From positions 186,001 through 250,000 of the forward strand of contig NIVC01001483.1 of the NCBI GenBank assembly GCA_002269645.1: a stretch of 64,000 nt of DNA, written 5' to 3'. Below the pieces are notes generated by a model that did no database searches, was not told the DNA's origin, and worked only from the letters and a program-made list of their open reading frames with translations. Position 1 is the stretch's first letter, and every line of letters begins with the position of its first letter. Both the position numbers and the translations under genes were made by a program. This stretch comes from Macrostomum lignano (taxonomy: Eukaryota). This document shows positions 31,403-55,310 of the stretch, piece by piece.

Positions 31403-32152
31403 ACCTAAATATAGGCCACAGAATTAAACTTTTTTACTTTCAAACGAAATTGCTTGAGCATATTAGTTGAGATATTAAGCCCTCGTAACTAACCAAGGCC
31501 AACTGTGCTTAATTCGCTAACACATGGAAAAACAAAACTTTAATAATGCAAAATGAGTGCTAGCTTAAAAAATAAGTAATGAAATAACAAAGATTAAAGA
31601 TACACGTTTTATTAGTTTTCATCAGTAATTACTTCCAGTAAACCATTAAGTAAATGAGTAAATAGTGACATATCTAGTGATACAGAAATGCGCTAATTAC
31701 TTGTATATTGTGGTTTCTTTGAAATTCTAAAATAAATTGTAATAAACACTATAAAGATTTTTCCACTTAAGACTAAAGTATTCTTGGTTTATGAGAATCT
31801 CGAAGGATAGTTTATGGGAGAACGAAAGGATGTTTAATAGGCGATTCTAAGATAAGAGGAAAAGGGTTCTCATACGTGCAAAAATATTGTATATAAAAAC
31901 GTTTAATGTAACAAAGTTATGCAATGCGAATTTATTTCAATTGTGATCACGAAAAGTTCATTGATTCAGATTTTTTTTGAGAAAAGCTGTGAAATTTGTT
32001 AAAAATAAAACTTATTGTAATTTAAACAACAAATTCTGCTCTAAAAACTCTCAGATAAAGCGTATCCATTAGGAACTTTTTTAACCACAAAGTCTTGTAG
32101 CATTATAAAATCGTGTTAACTGATAGTTAATTAACTAATACAGTATAGCTTA

Positions 32153-33781
32153 AGAAGCCTTCATATTGCATAGGTCAGGCAAACCTACGCAGACAGCACT
32201 TCAGACCGAACCAGCAGCCTTCATATTGTATAGGTCAGGCAAACCTACGCAGACAGCACTTCAGACCGAACCAGCAGCCTTCATATTGTATAGGTCAGGC
32301 AAACCTACGGAGACAGCACTTCAGACCGAACCAGCAGCCTTCATATTGTATAGGTCAGGCAAACCTACGGAGACAGCACTTCAGACCGAACCAGCAGCCT
32401 TCATATTGCTTAGGTCAAGCAAACCTACGCAGACAGCACTTCAGACCAAACCAGCAGCCTTCTATTGTATAGGTCAAGCAAACCTACGCAGACAGCACTT
32501 CAGACCGAACCAGCAGCCTTCTATTGTATAGGTCAGGCAAACCTACGCAGACAGCACTTCAGACCGAACCAGCAGCCTTCATATTGTATAGGTCAGGCAA
32601 ACCTACGCAGACAGCACTTCAGACCGAACCAGCAGCCTTCATATTGTATAGGTCAGGCAAACCTACGCAGACAGCACTTCAGACCCAACCAGCAGCCTTC
32701 ATATTGTATAGGTCAGGCAAACCTACGGAGACAGCACTTCAGACCGAACCAGCAGCCTTCATATTGTATAGGTCAGGCAAACCTACGGAGACAGCACTTC
32801 AGACCGAACCAGCAGCCTTCATATTGCTTAGGTCAAGCAAACCTACGCAGACAGCATTTCAGACCAAACCAGCAGCCTTCTATTGTATAGGTCAAGCAAA
32901 CCTACGCAGACAGCACTTCAGACCGAACCAGCAGCCTTCTATTGTATAGGTCAGGCAAACCTACGCAGACAGCACTTCAGACCGAACCAGCAGCCTTCAT
33001 ATTGTATAGGTCAGGCAAACCTACGCAGACAGCACTTCAGACCGAACCAGCAGCCTTCATATTGTATAGGTCAGGCAAACCTACGCAGACAGCACTTCAG
33101 ACCCAACCAGCAGCCTTCATATTGTATAGGTCAGGCAAACCTACGGAGACAGCACTTCAGACCGAACCAGCAGCCTTCATATTGTATAGGTCAGGCAAAC
33201 CTACGGAGACAGCACTTCAGACCGAACCAGCAGCCTTCATATTGCTTAGGTCAAGCAAACCTACGCAGACAGCACTTCAGACCGAACCAGCAGCCTTCTA
33301 TTGTATAGGTCAGGCAAACCTACGCAGACAGCACTTCAGACCGAACCAGCAGCCTTCTATTGTATAGGTCAGGCAAACCTACGCAGACAGCACTTCAGAC
33401 CGAACCAGCAGCCTTCTATTGTATAGGTCAAGCAAACCTACGCAGACAGCACTTCAGACCGAACCAGCAGCCTTCTATTGTATAGGTCAGGCAAACCTAC
33501 GCAGACAGCACTTCAGACCGAACCAGCAGCCTTCTATTGTATAGGTCAAGCAAACCTACGCAGACAGCACTTCAGACCGAACCAGCAGCCTTCTATTGTA
33601 TAGGTCAGGCAAACCTACGCAGACAGCACTTTACACCGAACCAGCAGCCTTCTATTGTATAGGTCAAGCAAACCTACGCAGACAGCACTTCACACCGAAC
33701 CAGCAGCCTTCTATTGTATAGGTCAAGCAAACCTACGCAGACAGCACTTAACACCGAACCAGCAGCCTTCTATTGTATAGG
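32153..33781. repeat. 59/60-bp minisatellite derived from the 3' end of sulfotransferase copy 5, with a 418-bp higher-order repeat
   Basis: Same unit as 27728-29515. The variant pattern recurs at a 418-nt offset (ORFs 32465/32883 and 32524/32942). Confidence 0.95.
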
Positions 33782-34558
33782 TCAAGCAAACCTACGGAGA
33801 CAGCACTTCAGACCAAACCAGACAGCAAGGCCCACAGCCGAGCAGAAGCCGAAATTAGCAAGAGCACTAATTGTGTAAAAGCCAATGGCTTTCTTCTGGA
33901 ATTCAGCAGTATCATTCACATTTGGAAACGGTACATCGGGTACCGGCAGCTCCAGGAAGTTGCACAATGGTTCCCAACCATCCGAAACTCGAAACACTAA
34001 CAGTCGCTCTTTGGGAATAGTTCGAATCACCGCCTCGGTGTGACGGTTAAACGCTTCAATCAATTCTTTGTCTGTCATGTCCACTCGAATACCCAATCGC
34101 GAGTCGAAGATGTTGTGATGCAACGGCAGAAAGTAGGTCAGATTGAGAAGCCACAACGATGGGGCCAGCATACAACCCATAGCCTTCATACCCTTAAAGA
34201 TGGTACTGCGAACGCTCTCAACCCATCGTTGGGGATCGCGAACGCTCAGCACGAACTTGGCATTGGGATAAATCTTGAGTAGCTCAGGATAGAAAGCCGC
34301 TACAGGAAAGTCTGTTGTAGCAACAAAACCGTCAAAGATTTGGTCAGCCAGCTGTTTTGTTAAACCCTCTTTGGCAGCCTGATTCCACAGCTTCAAGTGG
34401 TGTCGCTTCTGTTTCATGATTACGAACATATGGTAGCACCGGCCGCCAAGCAGAATCTCTAGCGCCTTCATCTGCGAGTTGGTGCCAGTTCGCATCAGGC
34501 CAACACCAAACACCAATGGACCCGTAGTGGACTGTTGCAACTTGCTATCAAGAGACAT
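33782..34558 (-). CDS. Sulfotransfer_4/SmSULT-like sulfotransferase, copy 5 (258 aa, start MSLDSK)
   Basis: Family motifs intact. Start chosen by identity with copy 4. Confidence 0.9.
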   Translation of the reverse strand: MSLDSKLQQSTTGPLVFGVGLMRTGTNSQMKALEILLGGRCYHMFVIMKQKRHHLKLWNQAAKEGLTKQLADQIFDGFVATTDFPVAAFYPELLKIYPNAKFVLSVRDPQRWVESVRSTIFKGMKAMGCMLAPSLWLLNLTYFLPLHHNIFDSRLGIRVDMTDKELIEAFNRHTEAVIRTIPKERLLVFRVSDGWEPLCNFLELPVPDVPFPNVNDTAEFQKKAIGFYTISALANFGFCSAVGLAVWFGLKCCLRRFA

Positions 34559-35634
34559 TGCGCTTGCTTGCGATTCAGTTGATGTTAAACAATAAAAAAC
34601 GATAGCATGAATTAGTGCGCAAAGGTTACGCTTAGCTCTGCGGCACTGTGGTGGTCGCAACTCAGCCACGGATACTAGAATAACTAGACTAGATTAGCCA
34701 CTCAGCAAATTTGCGTGTAAGCTACTTTCAGTTCAGTAGTAAGTTAAACTGAAGCATTTTAATGTAATTTCTAAAAGACAAGGTTTATTTATTGGCTCTT
34801 ACACCCCCAAGCTTAAACCCTCAAACTCCACACGGAACCTCTACCCCCGCCCCACCGCCCAATTTTTATTACCCTACTCGGTTGTTCCAATCTAAATCAG
34901 CCATGTACATTTCAGTGGCTAATGTACATTATGGCTGAACCAATTAGCAAGCTGTTTACGCCTGCAAGCTTTGGCTTCTAAACTTATCGAAGTCATTTCA
35001 GCTGCCATTATTTTTATAAAATAACGTACGTATTCTTTATTGCTACTGAACTGAAAGTAGAAAGCTGTTTTACCAAGTATATATGACTGAGTGGCCCATT
35101 TAGTTATTCTAGTATCTGTGCTCACACCCAAAAAATTAATTTTCAACTTTTGGAGATAAAAACGTTCAAGTACGAATGCACTCGTACCAGACTTTTCAAA
35201 ATCCATTTTTACTTTTATGAAGATTCTAAGATATACAGCTACATTTGAGCTGGGTGACGAACTTGCTTAAACCCTCGTAACTAACCAAGGCCAACTGTGC
35301 TTAACTTAATTCGCTAACACATGGAGGAACAAAACTTCAATGCAAAATGAGTGCTAGCTTGAAAAAAAATTAGCAAAGAAATAACAAACAGACTAAAGAT
35401 ACACGTTCTATTAGTTTCCATTAGTAACTAGAAATAAAATGGACACGCTGTACTTTTTTTGCAAATTGTAAACTAAAATAATAACAGTATAGAATGGTAT
35501 AATACCGTGACTAGGTATAGCAATGGAAATGAATAAATATTAACATATCTAGTGATAAAGAAATGCGCTAATTATATTGTGGTTTCTTTAAAATAGATTG
35601 TAACTATTCAGATTTTTACCGCGTAAAGTATTAT

Positions 35635-37990
35635 TGGTTATTGGGATATTCCTGAAGGATGGTTTATGGGATATTCCTGAAGGATGGTTTATGGGAGAAT
35701 CCTGAAGGATGGTTTATGGGAGATTTTTGAAGGATGATTTATGGGAGAATCCTGAAGGATGGTTTATGGGAGAATCCTGAAGGATGGTTTATGGGAGATT
35801 TTTGAAGGATGATTTATGGGAGAATCCTGAAGGATGGTTTATGGGAGATTTTTGAAGGATGATTTATGGGAGAATCCTGAAGGATGGTTTATGGGAGATT
35901 TTTGAAGGATGGTTTATGGGAGAATCCTGAAGGATGGTTTATGGGAGATTTTTGAAGGATGGTTTATGGGAGAATCCTGAAGGATGGTTTATGGGAGTTT
36001 TTTGAAGGATGGTTTATGGGAGATTTTTGAAGGATGGTTTATGGGAGAATCCTAAAGGATGGTTTATGGGATATTCCTGAAGGATGGTTTATGGGAGATT
36101 TTTGAAGGATGATTTATGGGAGAATCCTGAAGGATGGTTTATGGGAGATTTTTTAAGGATGGTTTATGGGAGAATCCTGAAGGATGGTTTATGGGAGATT
36201 TTTGAAGGATGATTTATGGGAGAATCCTGAAGGATGGTTTATGGGAGATTTTTGAAGGATGATTTATGGGAGAATCCTGAAGGATGGTTTATGGGAGATT
36301 TTTGAAGGATGGTTTATGGGAGAATCCTGAAGGATGGTTTATGGGAGTTTTTTGAAGGATGGTTTATGGGAGATTTTTTAAGGATGGTTTATGGGAGAAT
36401 CCTGAAGGATGGTTTATGGGAGATTTTTGAAGGATGGTTTATGGGAGATTTTTGAAGGATGGTTTATGGGAGATTTTTGAAGGATGGTTTATGGGAGAAT
36501 CCTGAAGGATGATTTATGGGAGAATCCTAAAGGATGGTTTATGGGAGATTTTTGAAGGATGGTTTATGGGAGATTTTTGAAGGATGATTTATGGGAGAAT
36601 CCTGAAGGATGGTTTATGGGAGATTTTTGAAGGATGATTTATGGGAGAATCCTGAAGGATGGTTTATGGGAGATTTTTGAAGGATGGTTTATGGGAGAAT
36701 CCTGAAGGATGGTTTATGGGAGATTTTTGAAGGATGGTTTATGGGATATTCCTGAAGGATGGTTTATGGGAGATTTTTGAAGGATGGTTTATGGGAGATT
36801 TTTGAAGGATGGTTTATGGGAGAATCCTGAAGGATGGTTTATGGGAGATTTTTGAAGGATGGTTTATGGGAGATTTTTGAAGGATGGTTTATGGGAGAAT
36901 CCTGAAGGATGATTTATGGGAGAATCCTAAAGGATGGTTTATGGGAGATTTTTGAAGGATGGTTTATGGGATATTCCTGAAGGATGGTTTATGGGAGAAT
37001 CCTGAAGGATGGTTTATGGGAGATTTTTGAAGGATGATTTATGGGAGAATCCTGAAGGATGATTTATGGGAGAATCCTAAAGGATGGTTTATGGGAGATT
37101 TTTGAAGGATGGTTTATGGGAGATTTTTGAAGGATGGTTTATGGGAGAATCCTAAAGGATGGTTTATGGGAGATTTTTGAAGGATGGTTTATGGGAGAAT
37201 CCTGAAGGATGGTTTATGGGAGATTTTTGAAGGATGGTTTATGGGAGATTTTTGAAGGATGATTTATGGGAGAATCCTGAAGGATGGTTTATGGGAGAAT
37301 CCTGAAGGATGGTTTATGGGAGATTTTTGAAGGATGGTTTATGGGAGAATCCTGAAGGATGGTTTATGGGAGATTTTTGAAGGATGGTTTATGGGAGATT
37401 TTTGAAGGATGATTTATGGGAGAATCCTAAAGGATGGTTTATGGGAGAATCCTGAAGGATGGTTTATGGGAGAATCCTGAAGGATGGTTTATGGGAGATT
37501 TTTGAAGGATGATTTATGGGAGAATCCTGAAGGATGATTTATGGGAGAATCCTAAAGGATGGTTTATGGGAGATTTTTGAAGGATGGTTTATGGGAGATT
37601 TTTGAAGGATGATTTATGGGAGAATCCTGAAGGATGGTTTATGGGAGATTTTTGAAGGATGATTTATGGGAGAATCCTGAAGGATGGTTTATGGGAGATT
37701 TTTGAAGGATGGTTTATGGGAGAATCCTGAAGGATGGTTTATGGGAGTTTTTTGAAGGATGGTTTATGGGATATTCCTGAAGGATGGTTTATGGGAGATT
37801 TTTGAAGGATGATTTATGGGAGAATCCTGAAGGATGGTTTATGGGAGATTTTTGAAGGATGGTTTATGGGATATTCCTGAAGGATGGTTTATGGGAGATT
37901 TTTGAAGGATGGTTTATGGGAGAATCCTAAAGGATGGTTTATGGGAGAATCCTGAAGGATGGTTTATGGGAGAATCATGAAGGATGACTT
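35635..37990. repeat. 25-bp minisatellite (GAAGGATGGTTTATGGGAGAATCCT / ...GAGATTTTT)n, about 2.35 kb
   Basis: Visible array of two alternating unit variants. Confidence 0.95.
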
Positions 37991-38077
37991 ATAGTAGATT
38001 CTTAAGCCGACAAAACCAACAAGAGGAGGCAATGCACTTAAGTCGTGAACTTATTGATAAAAAATATTTTGCAAATG

Positions 38078-38857
38078 TCAAACAAACCGGCGCAGAGCGA
38101 ACTTCAACCCAAACCAGACAATCGCCCCAGCAACCGAGCAGACAGCCAAATTAGTAGTGACACTGGCCATATCGATGAAGTGAGCAAAGAACACAAACTC
38201 ATTAGTGTCTTTAATATGCGGAAACGGTCGATCGGGCACAGGTACACCCAGGTAGCTGCACAGAGGCTCCCAACCATCGGTGACTCGATAGATCAACAGT
38301 CGATCTTTAGGAATCGTTCTTTGTACAGCTTCAGCATGCCGTTCAAAAGCAGCGGTCATCTCCGCTTCAGTCATGTCAAAATTGAACACGAATCTAGATT
38401 GAAATATAGCATCGTGTAACAGTTGGAAGTAGCTGAGATCCCACAGCCACCGAGTCAGAGGTAACATCCGGCCCACAGCTCGATAGACACGACCAATAGT
38501 CAGTTTCATGCTATTCGACCAACGCTTGGGATCGCGAAGGCTTAAAATGAACTTCGCCTCGGGATAAATCTGCGCCAACTCGGCGTAAAACATTGCCGTA
38601 GGAAAATCTGCTGCCGCAACAAAACCGTCAAATATTTGATCGGCTAGTTCTTTAGTCAGGCCCTGAGTAGCGGCTCTGTGCCACAGTTTGAAATGATCCC
38701 GCCTCTCAGACATTATCACCTGCATGTGATAGCAACGACCGTTTAGAAGTCTCTCCAAGGCTTTCATCTGCGAATTGGTGCCAGTTCGCATCAGACCTGT
38801 GCATATCACTTTTGGCCCACCCTGCGACTGCTCACTTTGAGTATCCGGTTCTGTCAT
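38078..38857 (-). CDS. Sulfotransfer_4/SmSULT-like sulfotransferase, copy 6 (259 aa)
   Basis: VICTGLMRTGTNS, CYHM, AADFP, RDPKRW, GWEPLCSYL, and a TM tail. Confidence 0.9.
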   Translation of the reverse strand: MTEPDTQSEQSQGGPKVICTGLMRTGTNSQMKALERLLNGRCYHMQVIMSERRDHFKLWHRAATQGLTKELADQIFDGFVAAADFPTAMFYAELAQIYPEAKFILSLRDPKRWSNSMKLTIGRVYRAVGRMLPLTRWLWDLSYFQLLHDAIFQSRFVFNFDMTEAEMTAAFERHAEAVQRTIPKDRLLIYRVTDGWEPLCSYLGVPVPDRPFPHIKDTNEFVFFAHFIDMASVTTNLAVCSVAGAIVWFGLKFALRRFV

Positions 38858-38989
38858 GAGTAGTTTCGATTTTTTTTGCTGGTCTGCTTTTGATTTGCTG
38901 AAATAGAGATTTATATATTGTTTAGGGAATTTTGTGAAGAAACAAAAAAGACCATCCTTTATGAATAAAAATAAATGGTAATTAGACTC

Positions 38990-39330
38990 TTGTAAGGAAT
39001 TAGATGAGACTGTTAGGGGGAATAAGAGACTCTTGATGGCGAATTAGAGGACACTTCTGAGGGGAATTAGAGGAGACTTTTGAGGAAAATTAGATGAGAA
39101 TCTTGAGGGGAATTAGATGACAATCTTTAGGGGAATTAGATGAGACTCTTGAGGGAAATTAGAAGACACTATTGATGGGAATTAGAGGAGACTCTTGAGA
39201 GGAATTAGAGGGCACTATTTAGGGGAATTAGAGAAGACTCTTAAGGAGAATTAAAAAGAGGCTTACAAGGGGAATTAGGAAACTTTCAAGGAGAATTAGA
39301 GGAAGCTCTTAAATGGAATTAGTGACTCTA
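38990..39330. repeat. degenerate about 24-bp repeat (GGGAATTAGAGGAGACTCTTGA)
   Basis: Recurring GGAATTAGA core. Confidence 0.75.
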
Positions 39331-39555
39331 GAGAGAAATTATAAATGTCCATTGATGAAAATCAGAGGATTGACATAGTGAAAATACTAAAATGTTTACA
39401 ATAATAAATCTCATATGGTATCGACGTGATAAAGGCTGTTGAAAAATTATTTATTCAAATAAATAATCAGTTAAGATTTAAAAACTCCTATCAATAACTA
39501 TAAAAATGAATAATTATTCCATTGAGTTAATTGCACAAAAATTCAATTGAGATTG

Positions 39556-40350
39556 CTAGCTCTGAGCACAGGTAGAGGACCGCAGCAAGTATTTAACACC
39601 AACCCAGACACCTCCAAAGACAGCTGAACAAACTGCTAAATTAAGCAGAGGCCCGACAATCTTGAGCCCGACAATTGTTTCTAAGAATCGTTTCGTATCG
39701 TTCAGATGAGGAAACGGTTCGTTCGAAGGCACGGGCAGCTCCAGGAACTTACACAACGGTTCCCAACCGTCTGACACTCGAAATACCAACAGTCTCTCCT
39801 TCGGTATGGTTCGAATCACTGTGTCATTGTGACGGTTAAACGCGTCGATCATTTCCGCATCAGACATGTCAAAATTGAAGCCCAAACGAGAGCCCAGCAC
39901 AGCGTCACTCAGAGGCAAGTAGTGAGACAGTCCCAGAAGCCATCGCACTGGCGGTAGCATGTACTCAACTGTCAGTTTAGACTGCAGAATGGTAGCCCGG
40001 ACACTTCTCACCCAATCGGTTGGATCGCGAATGCTCAGTACAAACTTGGCGTCAGGATAAATCTGCATCAATTCCTTGTAGAAGTGAGCAGCTGGAAAGT
40101 CTGTACAAGCCAGAAAGTCGTCAAATATTTCCTCAGCCAATTCTTTGCTCAAGCCTTGGATAGCAGCTCGATGCCACAGCTGCAGATGTGACAGCTTCTC
40201 TTCCATCACAATGTCCATATGATAGCAGCGGCCGCCAAGCAGCATCTCCAGCGCCTTCATCTGCGAATTGGTGCCAGTTCGCATCAGGCCAGCGCCAATC
40301 ACACGAAGACCAGCTGAAGATTTGTTTTTCCTACTAGCAGCAGAAGACAT
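39556..40350 (-). CDS. Sulfotransfer_4/SmSULT-like sulfotransferase, copy 7 (264 aa)
   Basis: RVIGAGLMRTGTNS, CTDFP, RDPTDW, GWEPLCKFL, and a TM tail. Confidence 0.9.
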   Translation of the reverse strand: MSSAASRKNKSSAGLRVIGAGLMRTGTNSQMKALEMLLGGRCYHMDIVMEEKLSHLQLWHRAAIQGLSKELAEEIFDDFLACTDFPAAHFYKELMQIYPDAKFVLSIRDPTDWVRSVRATILQSKLTVEYMLPPVRWLLGLSHYLPLSDAVLGSRLGFNFDMSDAEMIDAFNRHNDTVIRTIPKERLLVFRVSDGWEPLCKFLELPVPSNEPFPHLNDTKRFLETIVGLKIVGPLLNLAVCSAVFGGVWVGVKYLLRSSTCAQS

Positions 40351-42050: not shown

Positions 42051-45000
42051 TCAGTGCCGACCAGAAGCGGCTGCAGACTGGCTGCTTCCGGTTTTGGTGC
42101 TATTTTTAGCAGCAAATTCGGCCATTCTCCGCTCCAGTTCCGGCCGGAAGTGCCGGATGAGGCCCTGGGCTGGCCAAGCGGCTCCGTCGCCGAGGGCGCA
42201 GATTGTGTGGCCTTCAATCTGCTTGGACACCTCCCACAGCAGGTCGATCTCCTCCGGGCGGGCGTCCCCGGTGACAAAGCGATTGGTTAATCGCATCATC
42301 CAGCCGGTGCCCTCCCGGCAGGGTGTGCATTGGCCGCAGCTCTCGTGCTTGTAGAAGTCCATCAGGCGGGCGATGCATTTCACAACATCAGCCTGCTTGT
42401 TCATCACGATTAGGGCGGCTGTGCCTGCGGGGGGGGGGCAGTTCACGTTGGTTAGGATTAGGGATAACTAGCAATCTACGCCCCCCGTTGGGGAGCCAAA
42501 GAAATGCAATACACGTTTTTTTAATAAGCTACATGTATCCTTGAAATCTTAAAAAATCTCCTGTCAAACCTTGTAAGCCTTGAATGTCAGTAATTCCCCC
42601 CACAAGCTTTAACATATCAACTCCCCCCCCCCTGACATCTCAGCAATGCCCCCAATAAGCCTTGAAAATCTAAAAATATCTGTCAACCTTCTAACCCTAA
42701 TCCAAACCTAACCCTAACCCTAACCCTAGCCTAACCCTAACCCTAACCCTAACCCTAACCCTAACCCTAACCCTAACCCTAACCTAACCCTAAAGCATTG
42801 AAATTTCAGTAATTCTCTCTAAGAGTCATTATAGCACTACTACAGCATAGTACTACTACATACTACTACACTAATCATCATAGTACTAATGAGTACATAG
42901 TACTACATAGTACTACTACACAATGATGATTAGTGACGATTCTTAGGGTGGATTAGTGACGATTCTTAGGGTGGATTAGTGACGATTCTTAGGGTGGATT
43001 AGTGACGATTCTTATGGTGGATTAGTGACGATTCTTAGGGTGGATTAGTGACGATTCTTAGGGTGGATTAGTGACGATTCTTATGGTGGATTAGTGACGA
43101 TTCTTATGGTGGATTAGTGACGATTCTTATGGTGGATTAGTGACGATTCTTAGGGTGGATTAGTGACGATTCTTATGGTGGATTAGTGACGATTCTTAGG
43201 GTGGATTAGTGACGATTCTTATGGTGGATTAGTGACGATTCTTATGGTGGATTAGTGACGATTCTTATAAGGGGTGGATTAGTGACGATTCTTATGGTGG
43301 ATTAGTGACGATTCTTATGGTGGATTAGTGACGATTCTTATAAAAGGCGGATTAACAACAATCCCGAGAGGTGGATTAACGACAATCCTGAGAAGCGGAT
43401 TACGACAATCCTGAGGCGGATTAACGACAATCCTGAGGCGGATTAACGACAATCCTGAGGCGGATTAACGACAATCCTGAGAGGCGCCTCAAAGACGCAC
43501 CAATGCACTGAGAACTCACCCAGAGCAGTCTGAGCCTGAACCAGCGAGTCGAAGTCCATCAGCACAGTGTCGCACACATTCTTAGGAATCAGCGGAGTGG
43601 AGCTGCCGCCCGGGATCACGGCCAGCAGGTTGTCCCAGCCGCCAATGACGCCACCGGCGTGCCGCTCGATCAGCTCCTTCATGGTGATGGACATCTCCTC
43701 CTCTACTGTGCAGGGATTGTTGACGTGCCCGGAGATGTTGAACAGTTTCGTGCCGCGGTTGCGGTCCCGGCCGAAGCTGGCGAACCAGGCGCCCCCGCGT
43801 CGGCAGACGGTCGGCGCCGCGGCGATGGTCTCGACGTTGTTCACCGTGGTGGGACAGCCGAACACGCCGACATCGGCTGGAAACGGCGGCTTCAGACGCG
43901 GCTTGCCGGCTTTGCCTTCCAGAGATTCAATCAGCGAAGTCTCCTCGCCGCAGATGTAGGCGCCGGCGCCGCGGTGCACGTAGATGTCGTAGTCATAGCC
44001 GCTGCCGCAGGCGTTCTTGCCGAGGAAGCCGGCGTCGTAGGCTTCGTTGATGGCGGCCTGGGGAAAAGGTTGAGACGGAAGGGTTGATCACTCTATCAAT
44101 TCGTCAATTGATCACTCTATCAATTCGTCTATTAATAAATCTATCAATTCATCTATTTATCAATCTATCAATTCATCTATTGATCAATCTATCAATCAAT
44201 TCGTCTATAAATCAATCTATCAATTCGTCTATTGATCACTCCATCAATTCGTCTATTGATCACTCTATCAATTCATCTATTGATCAATCTATCAATCAAT
44301 TCGTCTATAAATCAATTCATCAATTCGTCTATTGATCACTCCATCAATTCGTCTATTGATCACTCTATCAATTCATCTATTGATCAATCTATCAATCAAT
44401 TCGTCTATAAATCAATTCATCAATTCGTCTATTGATCACTCCATCAATTCGTCAATTGATCACTCTATCAATTCGTCTATAAATCAATCTATCAATTCGT
44501 CTATTGATCACTCTATCAATTCGTCTATTGATCAATCTATCAATCGATTCGTCTATAAATCAATCTATCAATTTGTCTATTGATAAATCTATCAATTCGT
44601 CTATTGATCAATCTATCAATTCTTTAGTCGACTGATCAATCTATCAATTCTTTAGTCGACTGATCAATCTATCAATTCTTTAGTCGACTGATCAATCTAT
44701 CAATTCTTTAGTCGACTGATCAATCTATCAATTCTTTAGTCGACTGATCAATCTATCAATTCTTTAGTCGACTGATCAATCTATCAATTCTTTAGTCGAC
44801 TGATCAATTCATCAATTCTTTAGTCGATTGATCAATCTATCAATTCTCTAGTCGATTGATCAATCTAGACTATCAATTCATCCATTCATCAATCTAACAA
44901 TTCATCTAATGATCAATCTATCAATTCTCTAGTTGATTGATCAATCTATCAATTTATCTATTGATCACTACTAATACAACGGAATCTGTTCCAATCAATT

Positions 45001-45547
45001 AATTTACTAATATTCTCACCTGCAGAGTGCAGGCCTCCCTATAGAACTCGCCCCGAATGTAGATATAAGCCGCCCTGGCTCCCATAGCAACGCCGGAAAC
45101 GAGGCAGCCCTCAACCAGAGTGTGCGGATCGTGCCGCATGATCTCCCGGTCTTTGCAGGTGCCAGGCTCTCCTTCATCAGCATTGACAACCAGATACCTG
45201 GGCCGGCCATCGTCCGGCTTGTGCATAAACGACCATTTCAAACCGGTTGGAAAGCCGGCTCCGCCCCGGCCGCGCATGCCGCTAACCTTCATCTCGTTAG
45301 TAATCCAGTCCCGGCCCTTCAGCACAATCTCTTTAGTCTTGTACCAGTGCCCGCGAGACATGGCCGCCTTCAGGCGCCAGTCGTGCCGACCGTACAGATT
45401 AGTGAAGATTCGATCCTCGTCTTTCAGCGGACCGAACACCGTCTTCTCTTGCTTTGGTGGCGGAGGCGGTGCTGCCGCGCCTGCCGACAGCTGACGGAGA
45501 GGCAGGCGCATCAACGAAGATGAAGACGCTTGGAAGCTGCGAAGCAT
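42051..45547 (-). CDS. NDUFV1: NADH:ubiquinone oxidoreductase 51-kDa subunit, join(45020..45547, 43520..44057, 42051..42424), 479 aa
   Basis: [41 protein letters not shown], and 4Fe-4S ligands [21 protein letters not shown] introns have matching phases (0, 1), and the N-terminus resembles a mitochondrial presequence. Confidence 0.97.
42468..42506 (-). mobile_element. Helitron-like 3' terminus in NDUFV1 intron 2
   Basis: Minus strand CCCCAACGGGGGG..GATTGCTAG|T, homologous to 4968-5009. Confidence 0.55.
42700..42795. repeat. interstitial telomeric repeat (CCCTAA)n
   Basis: About 14 units, partly degenerate, inside NDUFV1 intron 2. Confidence 0.9.
42945..43490. repeat. 23-bp (GTGACGATTCTTA[G/T]GGTGGATTA)n then about 21-bp (GGATTAACGACAATCCTGAGG)n minisatellites
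   Basis: Visible arrays in NDUFV1 intron 2. Confidence 0.9.
44085..44965. repeat. AT-rich minisatellite (ATCAATCTATCAATTCGTCTATTG)n
   Basis: Fills NDUFV1 intron 1. Confidence 0.9.
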
Positions 45548-45619
45548 GTTCTTGCTGTTGACTAAAGCACAATTTAACAATTAATTTCTTTTAAATATAG
45601 GCGATAACTCGCATAAATG

Positions 45620-49229: not shown

Positions 49230-52200
49230 TCAGATCACTAAATAGTTGAGCATCTTCTGCGGATCCAAAGCCTCGTAGATGTAAAGTGGATCTCGATGAC
49301 CGTTGCGTGATTTAACTGTAGCGCTGGCCCTGGCCAATTCGTCTTTGAATCTGGAAAAAAAATCGGAGTAATATTGTTTTCATCTACTGTAAGTAGAAAT
49401 ATAAGTAAAAAGCAACTATAAAAATTCCAGACAGAAAATTTTACTTTTAACATTGTTTTCATCTACTGTAAGTAGAAATATAAGTAAAAAGCAGCTATAA
49501 AAATTCCAGACAGAAAATTTTACTTTTAACATTGTTTTCATCTACTGTAAGTAGAAATATAAGTAAAAAGAGGCGAAACTCTTACTCTTGCAGGATTTGC
49601 ATCGAGGCCTGATCGTGGCTATATTGTAGCTCGTATTCGCCAAGCGGCTGTTCGCCTTTCTGTCGCTGGCAAAGACGGAACGATAGCACGGTGTCGATGA
49701 ACTCGCGACGGCAGGGTAGCGATTGCAGACTGGCCTCAAGAGGCTGCTCTTCCTTTAGGTGGTAAAGCAGCATTGGAGTATTGAAGTATATGTTAGTTTA
49801 GTGGTAGTTCAGGAGTGATTGTAAGGGTAGTTCAGGGGTGATTGTAAAGGTAGTTCAGGGTGATTGTAAGGGTAGTTCAGGGGTGATTGTAAGGGTAGTT
49901 CAGGAGTGATCGTGGGGGTAGTTCAGGGGTGATTGTAAGGGTAGTTCAGGGGTGATTGTAAGGGTAGTTCAGGGGTGATTGTAAGGGTAGTTCAGGAGTG
50001 ATCGTGGGGGTAGTTCAGGGGTGATTGTAAGGGTAGTTCAGGAGTGATCGTGGGGGTAGTTCAGGGGTGATTGTAAAGGTAGTTCAGGGTGATTGTAAGG
50101 GTAGTTCAGGGGTGATTGTAAGGGTAGTTCAGGAGTGATCGTGGGGGTAGTTCAGGGGTGATTGTAAAGGTAGTTCAGGGGTGATTGTAAGGGTAGTTCA
50201 GGGGTGATTGTAAGGGTAGTTCAGGGATGATTGTAAGTGTAGTTCAGGGGTGACTGTAAAGGTAGTTCAGGGTGATTGTAAGGGTAGTTCAGGAGTGATC
50301 GTGGGGGTAGTTCAGGGGTGATTGTAAGGGTAGTTCAGGAGTGATTGTAAGAATAGTTCAGGCGGATTTTGAGAGTAGTTCAGGAGTGATTGTAAGGGTA
50401 GTTCAGGAGTGATTGTAAGGGAAGTTCAGGGTTACAGCAATACAGCAAGGGTAGTTCAGGGGTGATTGTATGGGTAGTTCAGGAGTGATTGTAAGGGTAG
50501 TTCAGGGATGATTGTAAGGGTAGTTCAGGGGTGATTGTAAGGGTAGTTCAGGGATGATTGTAAGGGTAGTTCAGGGGTGATTGTAAGGGTAGTTCAGGGA
50601 TGATTGTAAGGGTAGTTCAGGAGTGATTGTAAGGGAAGCTCAGGGTTACAGCAATACAGCAAGGGTAGTTCAGGGGTGATTGTATGGGTAGTTCAGGAGT
50701 GATTGTAAGGGTAGTTCAGGGGTGATTGTATGGGTAGTTCAGGAGTGATTGTAAGGGTAGTTCAGGGATGATTGTAAGGGTAGTTCAGGGGTGATTGTAA
50801 GGGTAGTTCAGGGATGATTGTAAGGGTAGTTCAGGGGTGATTGTAAGGGTAGTTCAGGGATGATTGTAAGGGTAGTTCAGGAGTGATTGTAAGGGAAGCT
50901 CAGGGTTACAGCAATACAGCAAGGGTAGTTCAGGGGTGATTGTATGGGTAGTTCAGGAGTGATTGTAAGGGTAGTTCAGGGGTGATTGTATGGGTAGTTC
51001 AGGAGTGATTGTAAGGGTAGTTCAGGAGTGATTGTATGGGTAGTTCAGGCGGATTTTAAGAGTAGTTCAGGGGCTATTATCTAGGACATTAGGTAAGGAC
51101 AATTACTATATTATAGAGTTACAAATTCAGTGATTAGATTAATTGAAGATAGTTTCAACCCGACTGTGATAGCAGATGATGAATGTATTGGGGAATTTCT
51201 AAAAACTCTCTAAGCATACTATAGCACATGTACAAACGCAAACCTGCGGATCCTGAGGCAGGCAGCCGTGCAGAGCCAGAGGATAGTTAGGCGGGAAGCC
51301 GTACTCATCGAACTGGGGCTGCCAGGCAGCAGAGCCGTGCACACAGATCATGTACATCAGATTAGTGAGCAGCGGGATCAGCTCGTCAACGTGCTGAATG
51401 CCGGATTTGCCAGGCAAGCCTTTCAATCCGAGGCCGCCCTTCTCCAACGGGTTGGTCATCTCCGCCCACCAGCCCTGCAGCTCGATGTCCTCCATCAGCT
51501 TGCGCTTCATCGCCTCCATGGGATTGGCGTAGTACAGACGGGCCGCCTTGTCGCAGTGGCCAGCGATGGCCTTGTAGATCAGCATGGCGTCCTCACTGCG
51601 GGAAGGGGAGTTCCGTGATGAGACTGATGATCTTGGGGGGAGGGGGGGCTGCCAAGCAACTGAATATTTGGGAGGCTGGCTTAGCAACTGAGGATCTGGG
51701 AGGCTGGCCCAGCAACTGAATATTTGGGAGGCTGGCCCAGCAACTGAGGATCTGAGAGGCTGGCCCAGCAACTGAGGATCTGAGAGGCTGGCCCAGCAAC
51801 TGGATATTTGGGAGGCTGGCCCAGCAACTGCGGATCTGGGAGGCTGGCAAAGCAACTGAATATTTGGGAGGCTGGCCAAGCAACTGCGGATCTGGGAGGC
51901 TGGCCCAGCAACTGAGGATCTGGGAGGCTGGCAAAGCAACTGAATATTTGGGAGGCTGGCCCAGCAACTGAATATTTGGGAGGCTGGCTCAGCAACTGAA
52001 TATTTGGGAGGCTGGCCCAGCAACTGCGGATCTGGGAGACTGGCCCAGCAACTGAAGATCTGGGAGGCTGGCCCAGCAACTGAGGATCTGGGAGGCTGGC
52101 CCAGCAACTGAGGATCTGGGAGGCTGGCCCAGCAACTGAGGATCTGGGAGACTGGCCCAGCAACTGAGGATCTGAGAGGCTGGCCCAGCAACTGAGGATC

Positions 52201-55200
52201 TGAGAGGCTGGCCCAGCAACTGGATATTTGGGAGGCTGGCCCAGCAACTGCGGATCTGGTAGGCTGGTCCAGCAACTGAATATTTGGGAGGCTGGCCCAG
52301 CAACTGAGGATCTGGGAGGCGGGAACAACTATCAGTTACGATATTACAGGTTTGTCAACAAAAGTTATATGTTATAGCTAAAAAGTGAGCCTTGCACTCA
52401 CCGATAAGGGTAACCGGGCAGCACATTTGAGTCGTACACGCCGCGGTTCTCCAGCTCTCTGTAGATGTTAATCTGCTGATCAAATCGCCAGGCTTTAAAA
52501 GCCTTCTTCAACAGCTGCCGGATGCCCTTCCTAGACAGCTGAATGTTCTGAGCAATCCAGCCGCTATCGCTGAAGAACCACTCCTTCAGCTTGGCATTGA
52601 CAGCCAGCAGGTGACGGAAGTGCGGAGCTAGCATCTGGTAGAGCGGATGCGACTGCGACAGATTCTTGCGCATAGTAACGTAGATACCCTCAAGGATGAG
52701 GTGATGCAGCAGGCGGTTAGCAACCAGGTGATAGCAGGCATCCGTGAGGTTAAACCATAGCTTAGCCTGCAGCCAGGCGTGAGGACTATCGCTAGGCATG
52801 ATCGGCGCGCCCTCCTCCATGCGCTGGTTGAGCTGAATTGCCAGGGGAACCAGCTGCAATCGTTCGGTCCAGAAGAACAGAGCAATTGGAGAGCAGAACT
52901 GCCTGCCATTCTTGCACTCGACTCCCTCCATGATGCTGTAGTCAACTATAAACAGGCGCCTGGCGTCCAGGATGTGCTGCAGAGTCCAGCCTTCCAAATA
53001 GGGCTTCAACCATTCAACGGCTACGCCGAAATTATCCGGGATAGATTTGCAGACTTTGATTACGAACGGATTGCAGCCTTTGAGGCGTTGGGCACCGAAC
53101 ACGAGGTCGTGCTCAGGGCCGCTAGGATTGGCTGGCCAGCGCTGCACAGACAGCGGCTCCGTGATGCTGTGCGCCCGGTAGTAAGTGGTCAGATCGTCAA
53201 AGCTGGTGAAGTGATCCACGCTGGCATAGTCCACGTCCAGGCCTTTGTTGTAGATGATCTCGTCCTTGGTCTTCTCGATGTTCCAGCGGGTGTCCTAGGA
53301 GAGATTTTGGGCGATTCTGTCAGGGTAAGATTCTGGGCGATTCTCTCAGGGTGAGATCTAGGGCGATTCTCTCACGGTGAGATCTAGGGCGATTCTCTCA
53401 GGGTGAGATCTAGGGCGATTCTCTCACGGTGAGATCTAGGGCGATTCTCTCACGGTGAGATCTAGGGCGATTCTCTCACGGTGAGATCTAGGGCGATTCT
53501 CTCAGGGTGAGATCTAGGGCGATTCTCTCACGGTGAGATCTAGGGCGATTCTCTCACGGTGAGATCTAGGGCGATTCTCTCACGGTGAGATCCAGGGCGA
53601 TTCTCTCACGGTGAGATCCAGGGCGATTCTCTCACGGTGAGATCTAGGGCGATTCTCTCACGGTGAGATTCAGGGCGATTCTTTCAGGGTGAGATTATGG
53701 GCGATTCTCTCAGGGTGAGATCCAGGGCGATTCTCTCACGGTGAGATCCAGGGCGATTCTCTCAGGGTGAGATTAGTATGGGCGATTCTCTCAGTGACAG
53801 GGTCCAGGGCGATCCAGGGCGATTCTCTCAGTGACAGGGTCCAGGGCGATCCAGGGCGATTCTCTCAGGCTGAGATTATGGCAATTCTCTCAGGGTGAGA
53901 TTAGTATGGGCGATTCTCTCAGGGTGAGACAATGAGCGATTCACCTAAAATGAGATTAATGCGATTTCTCAAGGTGAGATCATAGGCGATTTTTAAAGAC
54001 ATTCTATTCTCTGGGGTAGAAAATGAGCAGTTTCTCAGGAAAGTATAATTGCAATACGGGAATCTTACAAACTGAGAATATAAATAGGCATTTACACTAA
54101 ATTAAACTGTTACCAACCTGGGAGAAAATTTCTTCGGCTGGCAAAGCCTGCAATTCCAGCGGCAGTCCGTTGGCCCGCTGATAGAACAGGAGATTGTTTC
54201 TGCGCTCGGATATCTCAGCGATGCGCTCGTCCGGCATGGGGTCGGCGGAAGGCAGCGACACCTGCGAGTGGTGCAGTGCATGCGTGCGTTTGAAATAATC
54301 AAGGGAGCTTTGAGCTTGAAGGGCGACTCTGAAGGGAGCTTTGAAGGGCGATTCTGAATGGAGATTCTGAAGGGAGCTCTGAAGGGCGATTCTGAAGGGA
54401 GCTCTGAAGGGCGATTCTGAAAGGAGCTTTGAAAGGCAATTCTGAAGGACGATTCTGAAAGGAGCTCTGAAGGGCGATTCTGAAGGACGATTCTGAAAGG
54501 AGCTCTGAAGGGCGATTCTGAAGGGAGCTTTGAAAGGCAATTCTGAAGGACGATTCTGAAGGGAGCTCTGAAGGGCGATTCTGAAAGGAGCTTTGAAGGG
54601 CAATTCTGAAGGGAGCTCTGAAGGGCGATTCTGAAAGGAGCTTTGAAAGGCAATTCTGAAGGACGATTCTGAAAGGAGCTCTGAAGGGCGATTCTGAAGG
54701 GAGCTTTGAAAGGCAATTCTGAAGGACGATTCTGAAGGGAGCTCTGAAGGGCGATTCTGAAAGGAGCTTTGAAGGGCAATTCTGAAGGGAGCTCTGAAGG
54801 GCGATTCTGAAGGACGATTCTGAAGGGAGCTCTGAATGGTAATTCTAAAGCCGATAAAACGACATGAAACCTGACAGTTGGAAATGCTTGCTGACTTACC
54901 TGACAGTCAAATGAATAATAGTGCCTATCGGGATGAATCCATCTGTGCACAGGAAAGTACGAATAGAGCCACTTTCCGCCCAGGCCTTTGCGCCTGTCCC
55001 TAATAATAACCTTCTCGCAAAACCAATCATAATTAACATGTTCTACTCCAGGTTCCACTGAACGCCAGAATTCAATTTTTTGCACCTTGCCAAAACCCTT
55101 CTTGCACCAGCTGGCCAGCGGTATGGTGAATTTGTCCCTAATACTGCCGTCCTCCTCTTGGAAGAAAGCGTTGCTCAGAGTGAAAGCTGGGGAGGCGTTA

Positions 55201-55310
55201 CCATCTCGGTCATACAGGTGCAGCGTGATGGTGGGGCCCTGTTCGGCCACTTTGTAGTCGCCAGTCACTGAGCAGATTTCGAAAGCAATTTTTGACGATT
55301 TGGCACCCAT
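49230..55310 (-). CDS. PLAT + lipoxygenase-fold protein, join(54900..55310, 54118..54261, 52402..53294, 51244..51595, 49586..49752, 49230..49350), 695 aa; iron ligands degenerate
   Basis: PLAT motifs (DWFCEKVII, YFPVHRWI) and LOX motifs (FGAQRLKGCNP, LVPLAIQL, WLQAKLWF, HPLYQMLAPHF, YPYREDA, PPNYP, LGEY, YEALDP..NYLVI*). All five introns are GT-AG with consistent phases 0,0,2,0,2. Confidence 0.9.
49373..49570. repeat. about 81-bp tandem duplication (about 2.4 copies) in LOX intron 5
   Basis: AACATTGTTTTCATCTACTGTAAGTAGAAATATAAGTAAAAAG... repeated. Confidence 0.85.
49800..51070. repeat. 23-bp minisatellite (GGGTAGTTCAGGGGTGATTGTAA)n in LOX intron 4
   Basis: Visible array. Confidence 0.95.
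51645..52320 (+). repeat. 28-bp minisatellite family A in LOX intron 3
   Basis: Same unit as 11125-12765 plus a GAATATTTGG variant. Confidence 0.95.
53305..53990. repeat. 26-bp minisatellite (GGGCGATTCTCTCACGGTGAGATCTA)n in LOX intron 2
   Basis: Visible array. Confidence 0.9.
54315..54845. repeat. minisatellite (GAAGGGCGATTCTGAAGGGAGCTCT)n in LOX intron 1
   Basis: Visible array. Confidence 0.9.

What the first reader, a model, noticed from the sequence alone, without database searches (positions are those of the whole stretch)
49230..55310. Intact lipoxygenase-fold gene that appears to have lost its catalytic iron site (candidate pseudo-lipoxygenase)
Seen: a complete 695-aa, 6-exon ORF with no stops or frameshifts and conserved LOX scaffold motifs. 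Established: LOX iron is bound by (human 5-LOX numbering) H367, H372, H550, N554 and the C-terminal Ile, in motifs HQxxxHLLxxH and QHAAVN/GHAAAN. Here the first motif reads HLVANRLLHHL: Q363->L, H367->R (codon CGC at 52713-52715) and a one-residue deletion before H372. The second reads CVHGSAAW (51322-51339): the His is shifted by one, so H550->G, and N554->W. Only H372 and the terminal Ile remain. Inference: multiple independent ligand losses in an otherwise preserved gene point to a non-catalytic lipid-binding, scaffold or sensor protein rather than a decaying pseudogene.
Basis: partly seen in the sequence, partly recalled or inferred. Interest (0 to 1): 0.8.

Follow-up and report, generated by a model that had tools for sequence, protein, structure and literature searches.

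The report
Flatworm lipoxygenase without its iron site
This intact, strongly conserved Macrostomum lignano gene encodes a lipoxygenase-shaped protein in which three of the five iron-binding positions have been replaced, and the same changes occur in every flatworm relative found (flukes, tapeworms, schistosomes), so the flatworm "5-lipoxygenases" in databases are most likely non-catalytic proteins.

Summary
On the minus strand at 49230-55310 lies a 6-exon GT-AG gene of 695 aa. It is identical to Macrostomum lignano BOX15_Mlig014613g1, with PLAT and lipoxygenase domains and a confident LOX fold (TM about 0.85 to 5-LOX). Against a profile of 78 canonical LOXs, the first iron His is Arg379 (or Asn378, depending on where a one-residue deletion falls). 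The second His is kept (His383). The third is Gly570, the Asn is Trp574, and the C-terminal Ile is kept.

This is not a quirk of one gene. A 77%-identical M. lignano paralog and all trematode and cestode orthologs (44-50% identity, full length) carry Arg / His / Gly / Arg-or-Trp at these positions; a truncated monogenean ortholog shows the Arg and His. No canonical LOX from any flatworm turned up. dN/dS is 0.10 between the paralogs and 0.065 between two Schistosoma species. The two former metal-binding helices are the most conserved parts of the family.

My best reading is an ancient, selected, iron-free pseudo-lipoxygenase. It is probably N-myristoylated (MGxxx[ST]K is invariant), with Arg379 occupying the metal's place. 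What it binds or does is untested. I found no paper describing this. It bears on where schistosome HETEs come from.

The parts
49230..55310 (-). Whole gene, ATG to TGA: 6 exons, 695-aa PLAT + lipoxygenase-fold protein (M. lignano BOX15_Mlig014613g1)
54900..55310 (-). Exon 1 (aa 1-137): start codon, MGAKSSK N-myristoylation-type motif, most of the PLAT beta-sandwich
54118..54261 (-). Exon 2 (aa 138-185): linker between PLAT and the catalytic-type domain
52402..53294 (-). Exon 3 (aa 186-483): core of the LOX domain, including the long helix 356-396 that carries the first ligand motif
52698..52730 (-). HLVANRLLHHL (aa 374-384). It replaces the canonical H-Q-x-x-T-H-L-G-F-T-H. It holds His374, Arg379 (CGC 52715-52713, at the first ligand position), a one-residue deletion, and His383 (CAC 52703-52701, the retained second ligand).
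51244..51595 (-). Exon 4 (aa 483-600): carries the second ligand motif
51322..51345 (-). CVHGSAAW (aa 567-574). Gly570 (GGC 51336-51334) replaces the third ligand His. Trp574 (TGG 51324-51322) replaces the ligand Asn. His569 is one position early and not conserved.
49586..49752 (-). Exon 5 (aa 601-656)
49230..49350 (-). Exon 6 (aa 656-695 plus stop): C-terminal ...LNYLVI. Ile695 is codon 49235-49233 (the retained C-terminal ligand residue); TGA is at 49232-49230.
54312..54850 (.). Minisatellite (25/63/88-bp units) filling intron 1
53301..53991 (.). Minisatellite (26-bp unit, about 27 copies) filling intron 2
51643..52320 (.). Minisatellite (28-bp unit, 24 copies) filling intron 3; the same unit recurs at 8.6-9.0 kb and 11.1-12.7 kb of the window
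49803..51073 (.). Minisatellite (23-bp unit, about 55 copies) filling intron 4

Best explanation
The gene encodes a conserved, iron-free, non-catalytic descendant of a lipoxygenase, that is, a pseudo-lipoxygenase. It arose before Macrostomorpha and the parasitic Neodermata diverged, and it is the only LOX homolog seen in flatworms.

Shown here:
- The full two-domain LOX architecture and fold are kept.
- The first and third ligand His and the ligand Asn are replaced by Arg379, Gly570 and Trp574 (Arg in parasites).
- A residue is deleted from the ligand helix.
- Second-sphere residues are also changed: the Gln after His374 in all flatworms, and the Gln before F/YDEY in the parasites. The Gly/Ala stereo-control ('Coffa') position is now Leu, flanked by new invariant Lys422 and Trp424.
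- The family is under strong purifying selection, strongest on the two former metal helices.

Inferred:
- No catalytic Fe or Mn can be held, because only His383 and the C-terminal carboxylate remain conserved.
- The one-residue deletion removes the pi-helical bulge that lets ligands sit at i and i+5. In a regular alpha-helix, Arg379 (i-4 from His383) would then point at the old metal position.
- The Arg379 guanidinium would stand in for the cation and pair with the still-conserved C-terminal Ile/Val carboxylate. His-to-Gly at 570 would make room for it.
- The protein would be tethered to the cytosolic face of membranes by N-myristoylation (MGxxx[S/T]K is invariant in 18 of 18 flatworm sequences) and by its PLAT domain.
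- It would act by binding through the remodelled channel and new PLAT surfaces, not by oxygenating lipids. The ligand is most likely a lipid or oxylipin, less likely a protein partner.
For: - Gene model and identity.
- Domains and fold: Pfam LOX 1.9e-41 plus PLAT; PDB 8R-LOX 3.6e-54; AlphaFold2 pLDDT 83.7 and pTM 0.86, with pLDDT 93-95 over residues 371-390 and 86-93 over 561-580; Foldseek TM 0.81-0.88 to 5-LOX, 11R-LOX, 8R-LOX and 15-LOX-2.
- Ligand states: the 30-sequence alignment and a profile of 78 canonical LOXs. Among 211 LOX homologs, every flatworm sequence that covers all four positions reads R/H/G/(R or W), and the three partial ones show R and H. About 150 others have the canonical His/His/His/Asn set.
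- Clade-discriminating invariant changes: H->R379, H->G570, A->S571, L->K422. Channel remodelling to KLKEW.
- Selection: dN/dS 0.10 (dS 1.38) against the paralog, and 0.065 (dS 0.69) for S. mekongi vs S. intercalatum.
- The most conserved 15-residue windows in the family start at residues 359-361, 568-579, 399 and 95.
- Flatworm clade recovered in 200/200 NJ bootstraps, with species-tree topology.
- N-terminal MGxxx[ST]K in all flatworm sequences.
- C-terminal Ile/Val in all 17 full-length flatworm sequences.
- No flatworm protein with canonical ligands among the hits.
Against: - No metal content, activity or lipid binding was measured.
- I could not read the coordinates of the model, so the Arg379-to-C-terminus contact is untested. 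The last five residues have only about 70 pLDDT.
- The position of the helix deletion is ambiguous. In the alternative register the first ligand aligns with residue 378 (Asn here, His in the paralog, Gly in parasites), which weakens the 'Arg replaces iron' geometry.
- Bulky Leu421 and Trp424 near the old pentadiene site could mean the fatty-acid channel is partly filled. That argues against lipid binding in the ancestral mode.
- Adult S. mansoni extracts were reported to have inhibitor-sensitive LOX activity producing a 15-HETE-like product (review PMC8718004, section 4.3). This would need another source.
- Absence of a canonical flatworm LOX rests on a word-prefiltered protein search, not on genome searches.
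Confidence: 0.62

Rival explanations
1. It is still a working dioxygenase, or another lipid-modifying enzyme, using a non-canonical centre. An example would be a minimal site built from His383, the C-terminal carboxylate and a nearby His/Asn (His374, His382, His569 or Asn378), or metal-free chemistry.
For: - The former active-site helices are the most conserved parts of the family.
- His374, His383 and the C-terminal Ile/Val are invariant.
- The window protein happens to have extra His at 382 and 569, and the paralog has one at 378.
- LOX-type activity and HETE production are reported for schistosomes, and no other LOX homolog was seen in flatworms.
Against: - His382, His569 and residue 378 are not conserved even between the two M. 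lignano paralogs, and are Thr/Asn, Ala/Thr/Ser and Gly in parasites.
- His374 and His383 are nine residues apart on one continuous helix, too far to chelate one ion (inference from helix geometry).
- Some second-sphere Gln positions and the Gly/Ala position by the oxygen channel are also replaced.
- Mn-LOXs use the same ligand set (established knowledge), so a metal swap does not rescue the site.
Confidence: 0.1
2. It is non-catalytic but not a lipid binder. The old channel is vestigial and plugged, and the protein works as a membrane-anchored scaffold or regulator through protein contacts on flatworm-specific surfaces.
For: - PLAT segments 61-80 and 101-120 are highly conserved within flatworms (0.83 and 0.88) but not among canonical relatives (0.32 and 0.36).
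- Bulky Leu421/Trp424, charged Lys422 and Arg379 (plus Arg574 in parasites) line what used to be the hydrophobic pentadiene pocket.
- The myristoylation-type N-terminus is conserved.
Against: A pure scaffold does not obviously need the buried former metal helices to be its most conserved elements. No partner is known, and nothing here tests binding of any kind.
Confidence: 0.25
3. It is a pseudogene or an annotation or assembly artefact that merely looks intact.
For: The key catalytic residues are missing. The introns are packed with minisatellites that carry long spurious ORFs.
Against: - 695 codons without a stop, and all splice sites canonical.
- dN/dS 0.10 and 0.065.
- Full-length orthologs with the same substitutions in more than 15 species, following the species tree.
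Confidence: 0.02

Closest known systems
Spiralian 'allene oxide synthase-lipoxygenase-like / 5-LOX-like' lipoxygenases (nemertean Lineus, bivalves, gastropods, annelids)
   Same: They are the closest canonical relatives, at 35-37% identity over the full length. They share the PLAT + LOX architecture, an N-terminal Met-Gly start, WxxAK, the HL..E helix signature, the F/YDEYG/AF motif and a C-terminal Ile.
   Different: They keep H-Q-x-x-T-H-L-G-F-T-H, H-A-x-x-N and PNSISI. The flatworm family has H-[ML]-x-x-x-R-L-(deletion)-L-x-H, G-S-x-x-[RW] and PNYPGI / LNYLVI.
Coral 8R-lipoxygenase (Plexaura homomalla; PDB 2FNQ, 3FG1, 4QWT) and 11R-LOX (3VF1)
   Same: Best sequence matches among solved structures (3.6e-54 and 2.3e-51). 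Fold match TM 0.81-0.86.
   Different: These are iron enzymes with the full ligand set. At their Gly stereo-control position the window protein has Leu421, with Lys422 and Trp424 alongside.
Human 5-lipoxygenase (PDB 3O8Y)
   Same: Fold match TM 0.84-0.88. Database names for the flatworm orthologs ('arachidonate 5-lipoxygenase') derive from this similarity.
   Different: Only about 22% identity. The equivalents of H367, H550 and N554 are Arg, Gly and Trp/Arg. The name implies an activity that the sequence does not support.
ALOXE3 (epidermal LOX with little dioxygenase activity)
   Same: A LOX-family member whose normal role is not dioxygenation (my own knowledge, not tested here).
   Different: ALOXE3 keeps the iron and is a hydroperoxide isomerase. 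The flatworm protein has lost the metal ligands themselves.
Other ligand-deficient LOX homologs seen here
   Same: Chelicerate (tick, mite, scorpion), amphioxus and several unnamed sequences also lack one or more ligands.
   Different: They show different substitutions (Ser/Trp/Asn/Lys at the first ligand), fall in separate clades (chelicerate clade in 193/200 bootstraps), and do not share the Arg/Gly/Arg-Trp pattern or the deletion.

Membership tests
Lipoxygenase superfamily (Pfam PF00305 + PLAT PF01477) | Significant sequence match to the LOX domain model | tested here: met
   142.8 bits against a cutoff of 23.6, E 1.9e-41, residues 248-674; 603 bits against a profile of 78 canonical LOXs
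Lipoxygenase superfamily (Pfam PF00305 + PLAT PF01477) | N-terminal PLAT/LH2 beta-sandwich | tested here: met
   PF01477 at 34.6 bits against a cutoff of 23, residues 15-131; beta strands over residues 8-134 in the model
Lipoxygenase superfamily (Pfam PF00305 + PLAT PF01477) | Two-domain LOX fold | tested here: met
   AlphaFold2 pTM 0.86; Foldseek TM 0.81-0.88 to 5-LOX, 8R-LOX, 11R-LOX and 15-LOX-2
Catalytically competent lipoxygenase (non-heme Fe/Mn dioxygenase) | First ligand His (5-LOX H367 / soybean LOX-1 H499) | tested here: not met
   Arg379 (or Asn378 in the alternative gap placement); Arg in 18/18 flatworm sequences
Catalytically competent lipoxygenase (non-heme Fe/Mn dioxygenase) | Second ligand His (H372 / H504), spaced five residues from the first | tested here: inconclusive
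   His383 is present and invariant, but one residue is deleted from the H-x4-H-x4-H helix, so the spacing to the first His is changed
Catalytically competent lipoxygenase (non-heme Fe/Mn dioxygenase) | Third ligand His (H550 / H690) | tested here: not met
   Gly570 in the ungapped profile alignment, and Gly in 17/17 flatworm sequences. The neighbouring His569 is unique to this copy. Pairwise phmmer can align His569 only with two indels.
Catalytically competent lipoxygenase (non-heme Fe/Mn dioxygenase) | Fourth ligand Asn/His/Ser (N554 / N694) | tested here: not met
   Trp574 here and in the paralog; Arg in all Neodermata
Catalytically competent lipoxygenase (non-heme Fe/Mn dioxygenase) | C-terminal Ile/Val whose carboxylate binds the metal | tested here: inconclusive
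   The terminal Ile695 is present, and Ile/Val is found in all 17 full-length flatworm sequences. Whether the tail inserts into the core could not be checked; tail pLDDT is about 70.
Catalytically competent lipoxygenase (non-heme Fe/Mn dioxygenase) | Bound Fe/Mn and oxygenation of 1,4-pentadiene fatty acids | not testable with these tools
   Needs recombinant protein, ICP-MS and activity assays
Pseudoenzyme (conserved inactive homolog of an enzyme) | Clear homology to an enzyme family combined with loss of residues essential for catalysis | tested here: met
Pseudoenzyme (conserved inactive homolog of an enzyme) | Maintained by purifying selection across species | tested here: met
   dN/dS 0.10 and 0.065; orthologs across Macrostomorpha, Trematoda, Cestoda and Monogenea
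Pseudoenzyme (conserved inactive homolog of an enzyme) | Demonstrated lack of the ancestral activity | not testable with these tools
   Biochemical assay required
N-myristoylated proteins | Met-Gly start with small/uncharged residue 3 and Ser/Thr at position 6 | tested here: met
   MGAKSSK. Gly2, Ser/Thr6 and Lys7 are present in 18/18 flatworm sequences; the cestodes have Glu at position 3, which is less favourable. The pattern rule comes from my own knowledge, and the modification itself was not tested.
Unitary or processed pseudogene | Stops, frameshifts, or dN/dS near 1 | tested here: not met

The most novel reading that the evidence does not exclude
Flatworms as a group have no functional lipoxygenase at all. 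Their single LOX lineage was converted several hundred million years ago into an iron-free protein in which an arginine side chain replaces the metal ion as partner of the C-terminal carboxylate. This freed a membrane-tethered LOX fold for a new binding or signalling role. If so, the HETEs and leukotriene-like lipids attributed to schistosomes and other flukes must be made by a different enzyme class, by host enzymes, or non-enzymatically, and the 'arachidonate 5-lipoxygenase' annotations in helminth genomes are wrong.
Probability: 0.4. Interest if true: 0.78.

Novelty: new variant of a known kind. Interest (0 to 1): 0.62.

Why it matters
Lipoxygenases are treated as obligate iron (or manganese) enzymes. 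I found no paper describing a conserved ligand-less family in seven full-text searches.

In this case the whole flatworm LOX lineage has the site dismantled in one fixed way yet remains under tight constraint. That includes the agents of schistosomiasis, echinococcosis, and liver and lung fluke disease. Three things follow:
- It gives a clean natural experiment on what a LOX fold can do without metal, and on whether an Arg can replace a structural or catalytic cation.
- It undercuts the functional annotation used in helminth genomics and in drug-target lists.
- It sharpens an old question. Schistosome extracts and secretions contain 15-HETE, 12-HETE, 5-HETE and leukotrienes thought to modulate host immunity (PMC8718004), but the only LOX-like gene seems unable to make them.

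M. lignano is free-living and amenable to RNAi and transgenesis, so it is a practical place to find the function.

Tried and rejected
- I looked for the AlphaFold model's coordinates to measure the Arg379-to-C-terminus distance and the cavity volume. They are not exposed in the sandbox, so the 'Arg replaces iron' geometry stays an inference.
- A 211-sequence MAFFT alignment shifted the second motif by one column, so its raw pattern table reads 'A/S' where the ligand His should be. I resolved this with residue counting and a canonical-profile HMM alignment.
- I tried to identify the organism behind a possibly intermediate LOX-like gene (Logan SRR23372228) through its neighbouring ribosomal protein S3a. 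The hits were uninformative, about 80% identity to many animals. Its own best named matches are annelid LOXs at 40-44%. Its grouping with flatworms (172/200 bootstraps, then 145/200 once annelids were added) may be long-branch attraction, so I do not rely on it.
- A Biopython bootstrap timed out and was redone with a numpy distance routine.
- My first spliced-mapping script failed on the 13-exon Schistosoma genes. It was fixed by allowing shorter seeds and GC donors.
- One literature query was badly built and returned only generic parasite papers. The planarian 'lipoxygenase' hits were not opened; I assumed, without checking, that they concern LOXHD/PLAT-repeat genes.
- Pseudogene and artefact readings were considered and rejected.
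Full report
**What is there.**
The region 49230-55310 holds a minus-strand gene of six exons: 55310-54900, 54261-54118, 53294-52402, 51595-51244, 49752-49586 and 49350-49230. All five introns are GT..AG. The CDS is 2088 nt and encodes 695 aa with no internal stop. The translation is 100% identical over its full length to the NCBI protein 'hypothetical protein BOX15_Mlig014613g1 [Macrostomum lignano]', so the window comes from this free-living flatworm. Pfam finds a PLAT domain (residues 15-131) and a Lipoxygenase domain (residues 248-674, 1.9e-41). The best solved relatives are coral 8R-LOX (3.6e-54), 11R-LOX, 15-LOX-2 and 5-LOX. An AlphaFold2 model built on a 30-sequence alignment is confident (mean pLDDT 83.7, pTM 0.86). 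It superposes on 5-LOX, 11R-LOX and 8R-LOX with TM 0.81-0.88.

**The iron site.**
Established knowledge, from soybean LOX-1 and human 5-LOX structures and mutagenesis, is that the metal is held by five groups. These are the second and third His of an H-x4-H-x4-H helix, a His and an Asn (sometimes His or Ser) in an H-x3-N helix, and the C-terminal Ile carboxylate. I tested each position in three ways:

- A 30-sequence alignment with flatworm and canonical relatives.
- A 211-sequence set from an exhaustive search of 1.8 billion representatives.
- A profile HMM built from 78 canonical LOXs.

For the second motif, the window protein and its canonical relatives have the same length between flanking anchors, and the profile aligns them without gaps. 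The consensus 'cSvqHAavNfpqYdeygf' lies over 'ICVHGSAAWQPQFDEYGF'. Pairwise phmmer against 8R-LOX can place His569 under the ligand His, but only with two compensating indels. That His is Gln in the paralog and Ala/Thr/Ser in all other family members.

In the first motif, the canonical H-Q-S-L-T-H-L-G-F-T-H becomes H-L-V-A-N-R-L-L-H-H, one residue shorter. Most alignments put Arg379 at the first ligand position and the gap after it. HMMER's alignment of the paralog puts the gap before it, which would place residue 378 there instead (Asn here, His in the paralog, Gly in parasites). Either way the window protein has no His at that ligand position. His383 (the second ligand) and Ile695 are retained. 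The coordinates given for the Arg codon (CGC, 52713-52715) are right. The range 51322-51339 covers only HGSAAW of CVHGSAAW.

**It is a family trait, not a lesion.**
The protein search returned three groups of flatworm relatives:

- A second M. lignano gene at 77% identity.
- Full-length orthologs at 43-45% BLASTP identity (47-49% over the alignment) from trematodes (Schistosoma, Heterobilharzia, Trichobilharzia, Fasciolopsis, Paragonimus, Dicrocoelium, Calicophoron, Opisthorchis) and cestodes (Echinococcus, Hymenolepis, Hydatigera, Mesocestoides, Spirometra).
- Partial sequences from Dibothriocephalus and from the monogenean Cichlidogyrus.

Many of these are named 'arachidonate 5-lipoxygenase'. 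Every one carries Arg at 379, the one-residue deletion and His383, and every one long enough to cover the second motif carries Gly570. Position 574 is Arg in Neodermata and Trp in Macrostomum. The tail PNSISI becomes PNYPGI or LNYLVI but still ends in Ile or Val.

The columns that cleanly separate flatworm from canonical sequences include H->R379, H->G570, A->S571 and L->K422. Some second-sphere positions have also changed: the Gln after the first helix His is gone in all flatworms, and the Gln before F/YDEY is lost in the parasites but kept in M. lignano. The Gly/Ala stereo-control position is Leu, within an invariant K-L-K-E-W stretch. No flatworm protein with canonical ligands appeared among the hits, although canonical LOXs from molluscs, annelids, echinoderms, arthropods and bacteria did.

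**Selection.**
I reconstructed the paralog's CDS from its contig (L001, NIVC01000149.1). Nei-Gojobori gives dN 0.140 and dS 1.38, so dN/dS is 0.10. dS is near saturation, which makes this ratio approximate. For a less saturated pair I spliced the 13-exon S. mekongi and S. intercalatum orthologs. These give dN 0.045, dS 0.69 and dN/dS 0.065.

Neighbour-joining trees recover the flatworm clade in 200/200 bootstraps. Macrostomum is sister to Neodermata, and cestodes and trematodes are each monophyletic, which is the pattern expected for vertical inheritance of one ortholog. Within the family, nearly all of the most conserved 15-residue windows start at residues 359-361 and 568-579, that is, on the two former metal-binding helices. 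PLAT segments 61-80 and 101-120 are conserved in flatworms but not in canonical relatives. A decaying pseudogene is excluded.

**How it most likely works.**
Shown: the fold is kept, the ligands are lost, selection is strong and is focused on the old active site, and an N-terminal MGxxx[S/T]K is invariant in all 18 flatworm sequences. The nearest canonical LOXs also start with Met-Gly, often followed by Cys.

Inferred: the protein binds no catalytic metal, because only His383 and the terminal carboxylate are conserved. The invariant His374 lies nine residues from His383 on one continuous helix, too far to share an ion with it.

In canonical LOXs the two helix ligands sit five residues apart on a pi-helical bulge (my own knowledge). 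Deleting one residue would give a regular alpha-helix in which Arg379, four residues before His383, faces the old metal position. An Arg side chain is long enough to put its guanidinium roughly where the iron sat. There it could neutralise the C-terminal carboxylate, whose residue type is still conserved. Gly570 would make room for it.

With a myristate and a PLAT domain, the protein would sit on the cytosolic face of membranes and act by binding. A lipid or oxylipin in the remodelled channel is my first guess. A protein partner on the new PLAT surfaces is the main alternative, and the bulky Leu421 and Trp424 near the old pentadiene pocket favour that alternative.

I put about 0.85 on 'selected, non-oxygenating, iron-free'. 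I put about 0.5 on the Arg-for-metal detail, and less on any specific ligand.

**Rivals.**
- A non-canonical active centre remains possible, at about 0.1. The strongest point in its favour is the published inhibitor-sensitive LOX activity and HETE/leukotriene output of schistosomes (PMC8718004, section 4.3). But the extra His residues in this copy are not conserved, and Mn-LOXs use the same ligands.
- A pure scaffold role is plausible, at about 0.25.
- Pseudogene or artefact is rejected.

**Comparison with what is known.**
By sequence and fold this is a member of the LOX superfamily. It fails three of the five ligand tests that define a catalytically competent LOX, so I do not file it as a lipoxygenase enzyme. 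It fits the definition of a pseudoenzyme, except that inactivity has not been measured.

Full-text searches combining lipoxygenase with platyhelminth, flatworm, schistosome, Macrostomum, pseudoenzyme, WormBase ParaSite, and phrases such as 'inactive lipoxygenase' found nothing describing this. The gene models themselves are already in databases, so the novelty lies in the reading and not in the sequence. I rate it a new variant of a known kind.

Ligand-deficient LOX homologs with different substitutions also exist in chelicerates, amphioxus and some unnamed animals. LOX pseudoenzymes may therefore have arisen several times.

**Limits.**
- No expression data were available.
- Model coordinates could not be inspected.
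- Planarians, polyclads and catenulids were not sampled by name.
- Absence of a canonical LOX in flatworms rests on protein databases, not on genome searches.

Noticed in passing
window 49351-54899 (the five introns of the gene): Four of the five introns are almost entirely filled by a different minisatellite each: 25/63/88-bp, 26-bp, 28-bp and 23-bp units, with 20-55 copies. Intron 5 holds 2.6 copies of a 79-bp unit. The arrays lack stop codons in several frames and create long spurious ORFs that run into exons.
   Followed up: partly
window 8626-8984, 11129-12740 and 51670-52313: The 28-bp unit GGGAGGCTGGCCCAGCAACTGAGGATCT of LOX intron 3 also forms arrays about 40 kb away in the window. There are 69 matches with up to 3 mismatches against 0 expected, so it is a dispersed minisatellite family.
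   Followed up: partly
window introns after aa 137 and 185, versus L001 (paralog, NIVC01000149.1) introns after aa ~103 and ~224: The two M. lignano paralogs (77% identical) share the three 3' introns (aa 482, 600, 655) but have different 5' introns. The paralog's last intron is about 24 kb. Only the aa-655 phase-2 intron is clearly shared with Schistosoma, which has 12 introns. This indicates rapid intron turnover.
   Followed up: partly
L002 9863-11389 (Logan SRR23372228, unidentified animal with ~34-nt introns): This LOX-like gene has the first ligand His replaced by Arg without the deletion (ILNFCLWRFGITH). The third His is kept, Ser sits at the Asn position, and the C-terminus is Ile. It groups with the flatworm clade in 145-172 of 200 NJ bootstraps, but its best named matches are annelid LOXs at 40-44%. 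It is either an intermediate state or long-branch attraction.
   Followed up: partly
proteins P0044, P0084, P0109 (tick, scorpion, mite), P0088 (amphioxus), P0104, P0115: These are independent LOX homologs lacking one or more iron ligands (Ser/Trp/Asn/Lys at the first position, and other changes). The chelicerate ones form their own clade (193/200 bootstraps). Ligand loss in animal LOX homologs may be recurrent.
   Followed up: partly
alignment A1, N-termini: The closest canonical invertebrate LOXs also begin with Met-Gly, often followed by Cys (MGNCCG, MGCCFG, MGNSCTS). This suggests N-myristoylated, possibly palmitoylated lipoxygenases in spiralians, hemichordates, echinoderms and arthropods.
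   Followed up: no
window 20507-40350, minus strand: There is a tandem cluster of seven single-exon genes of about 245-295 aa, with Sulfotransfer_4 domains (PF17784, about 1e-61 in the two copies scanned) and hydrophobic C-termini.
   Followed up: partly
window 42051-45580 (minus), 17638-18171 (minus), 14204-14758 (minus): Neighbouring genes are exons of the complex I 51-kDa subunit (NDUFV1: Complex1_51K, SLBB, NADH_4Fe-4S), a TAF11-like protein (TAFII28 domain) and a ribosomal L35p-domain protein, probably the mitochondrial one.
   Followed up: partly
Neodermatan orthologs, after window-protein residue ~600: Trematode and cestode orthologs carry an insertion of about 25 residues, rich in Ser, that is absent from Macrostomum and from canonical LOXs.
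   Followed up: no
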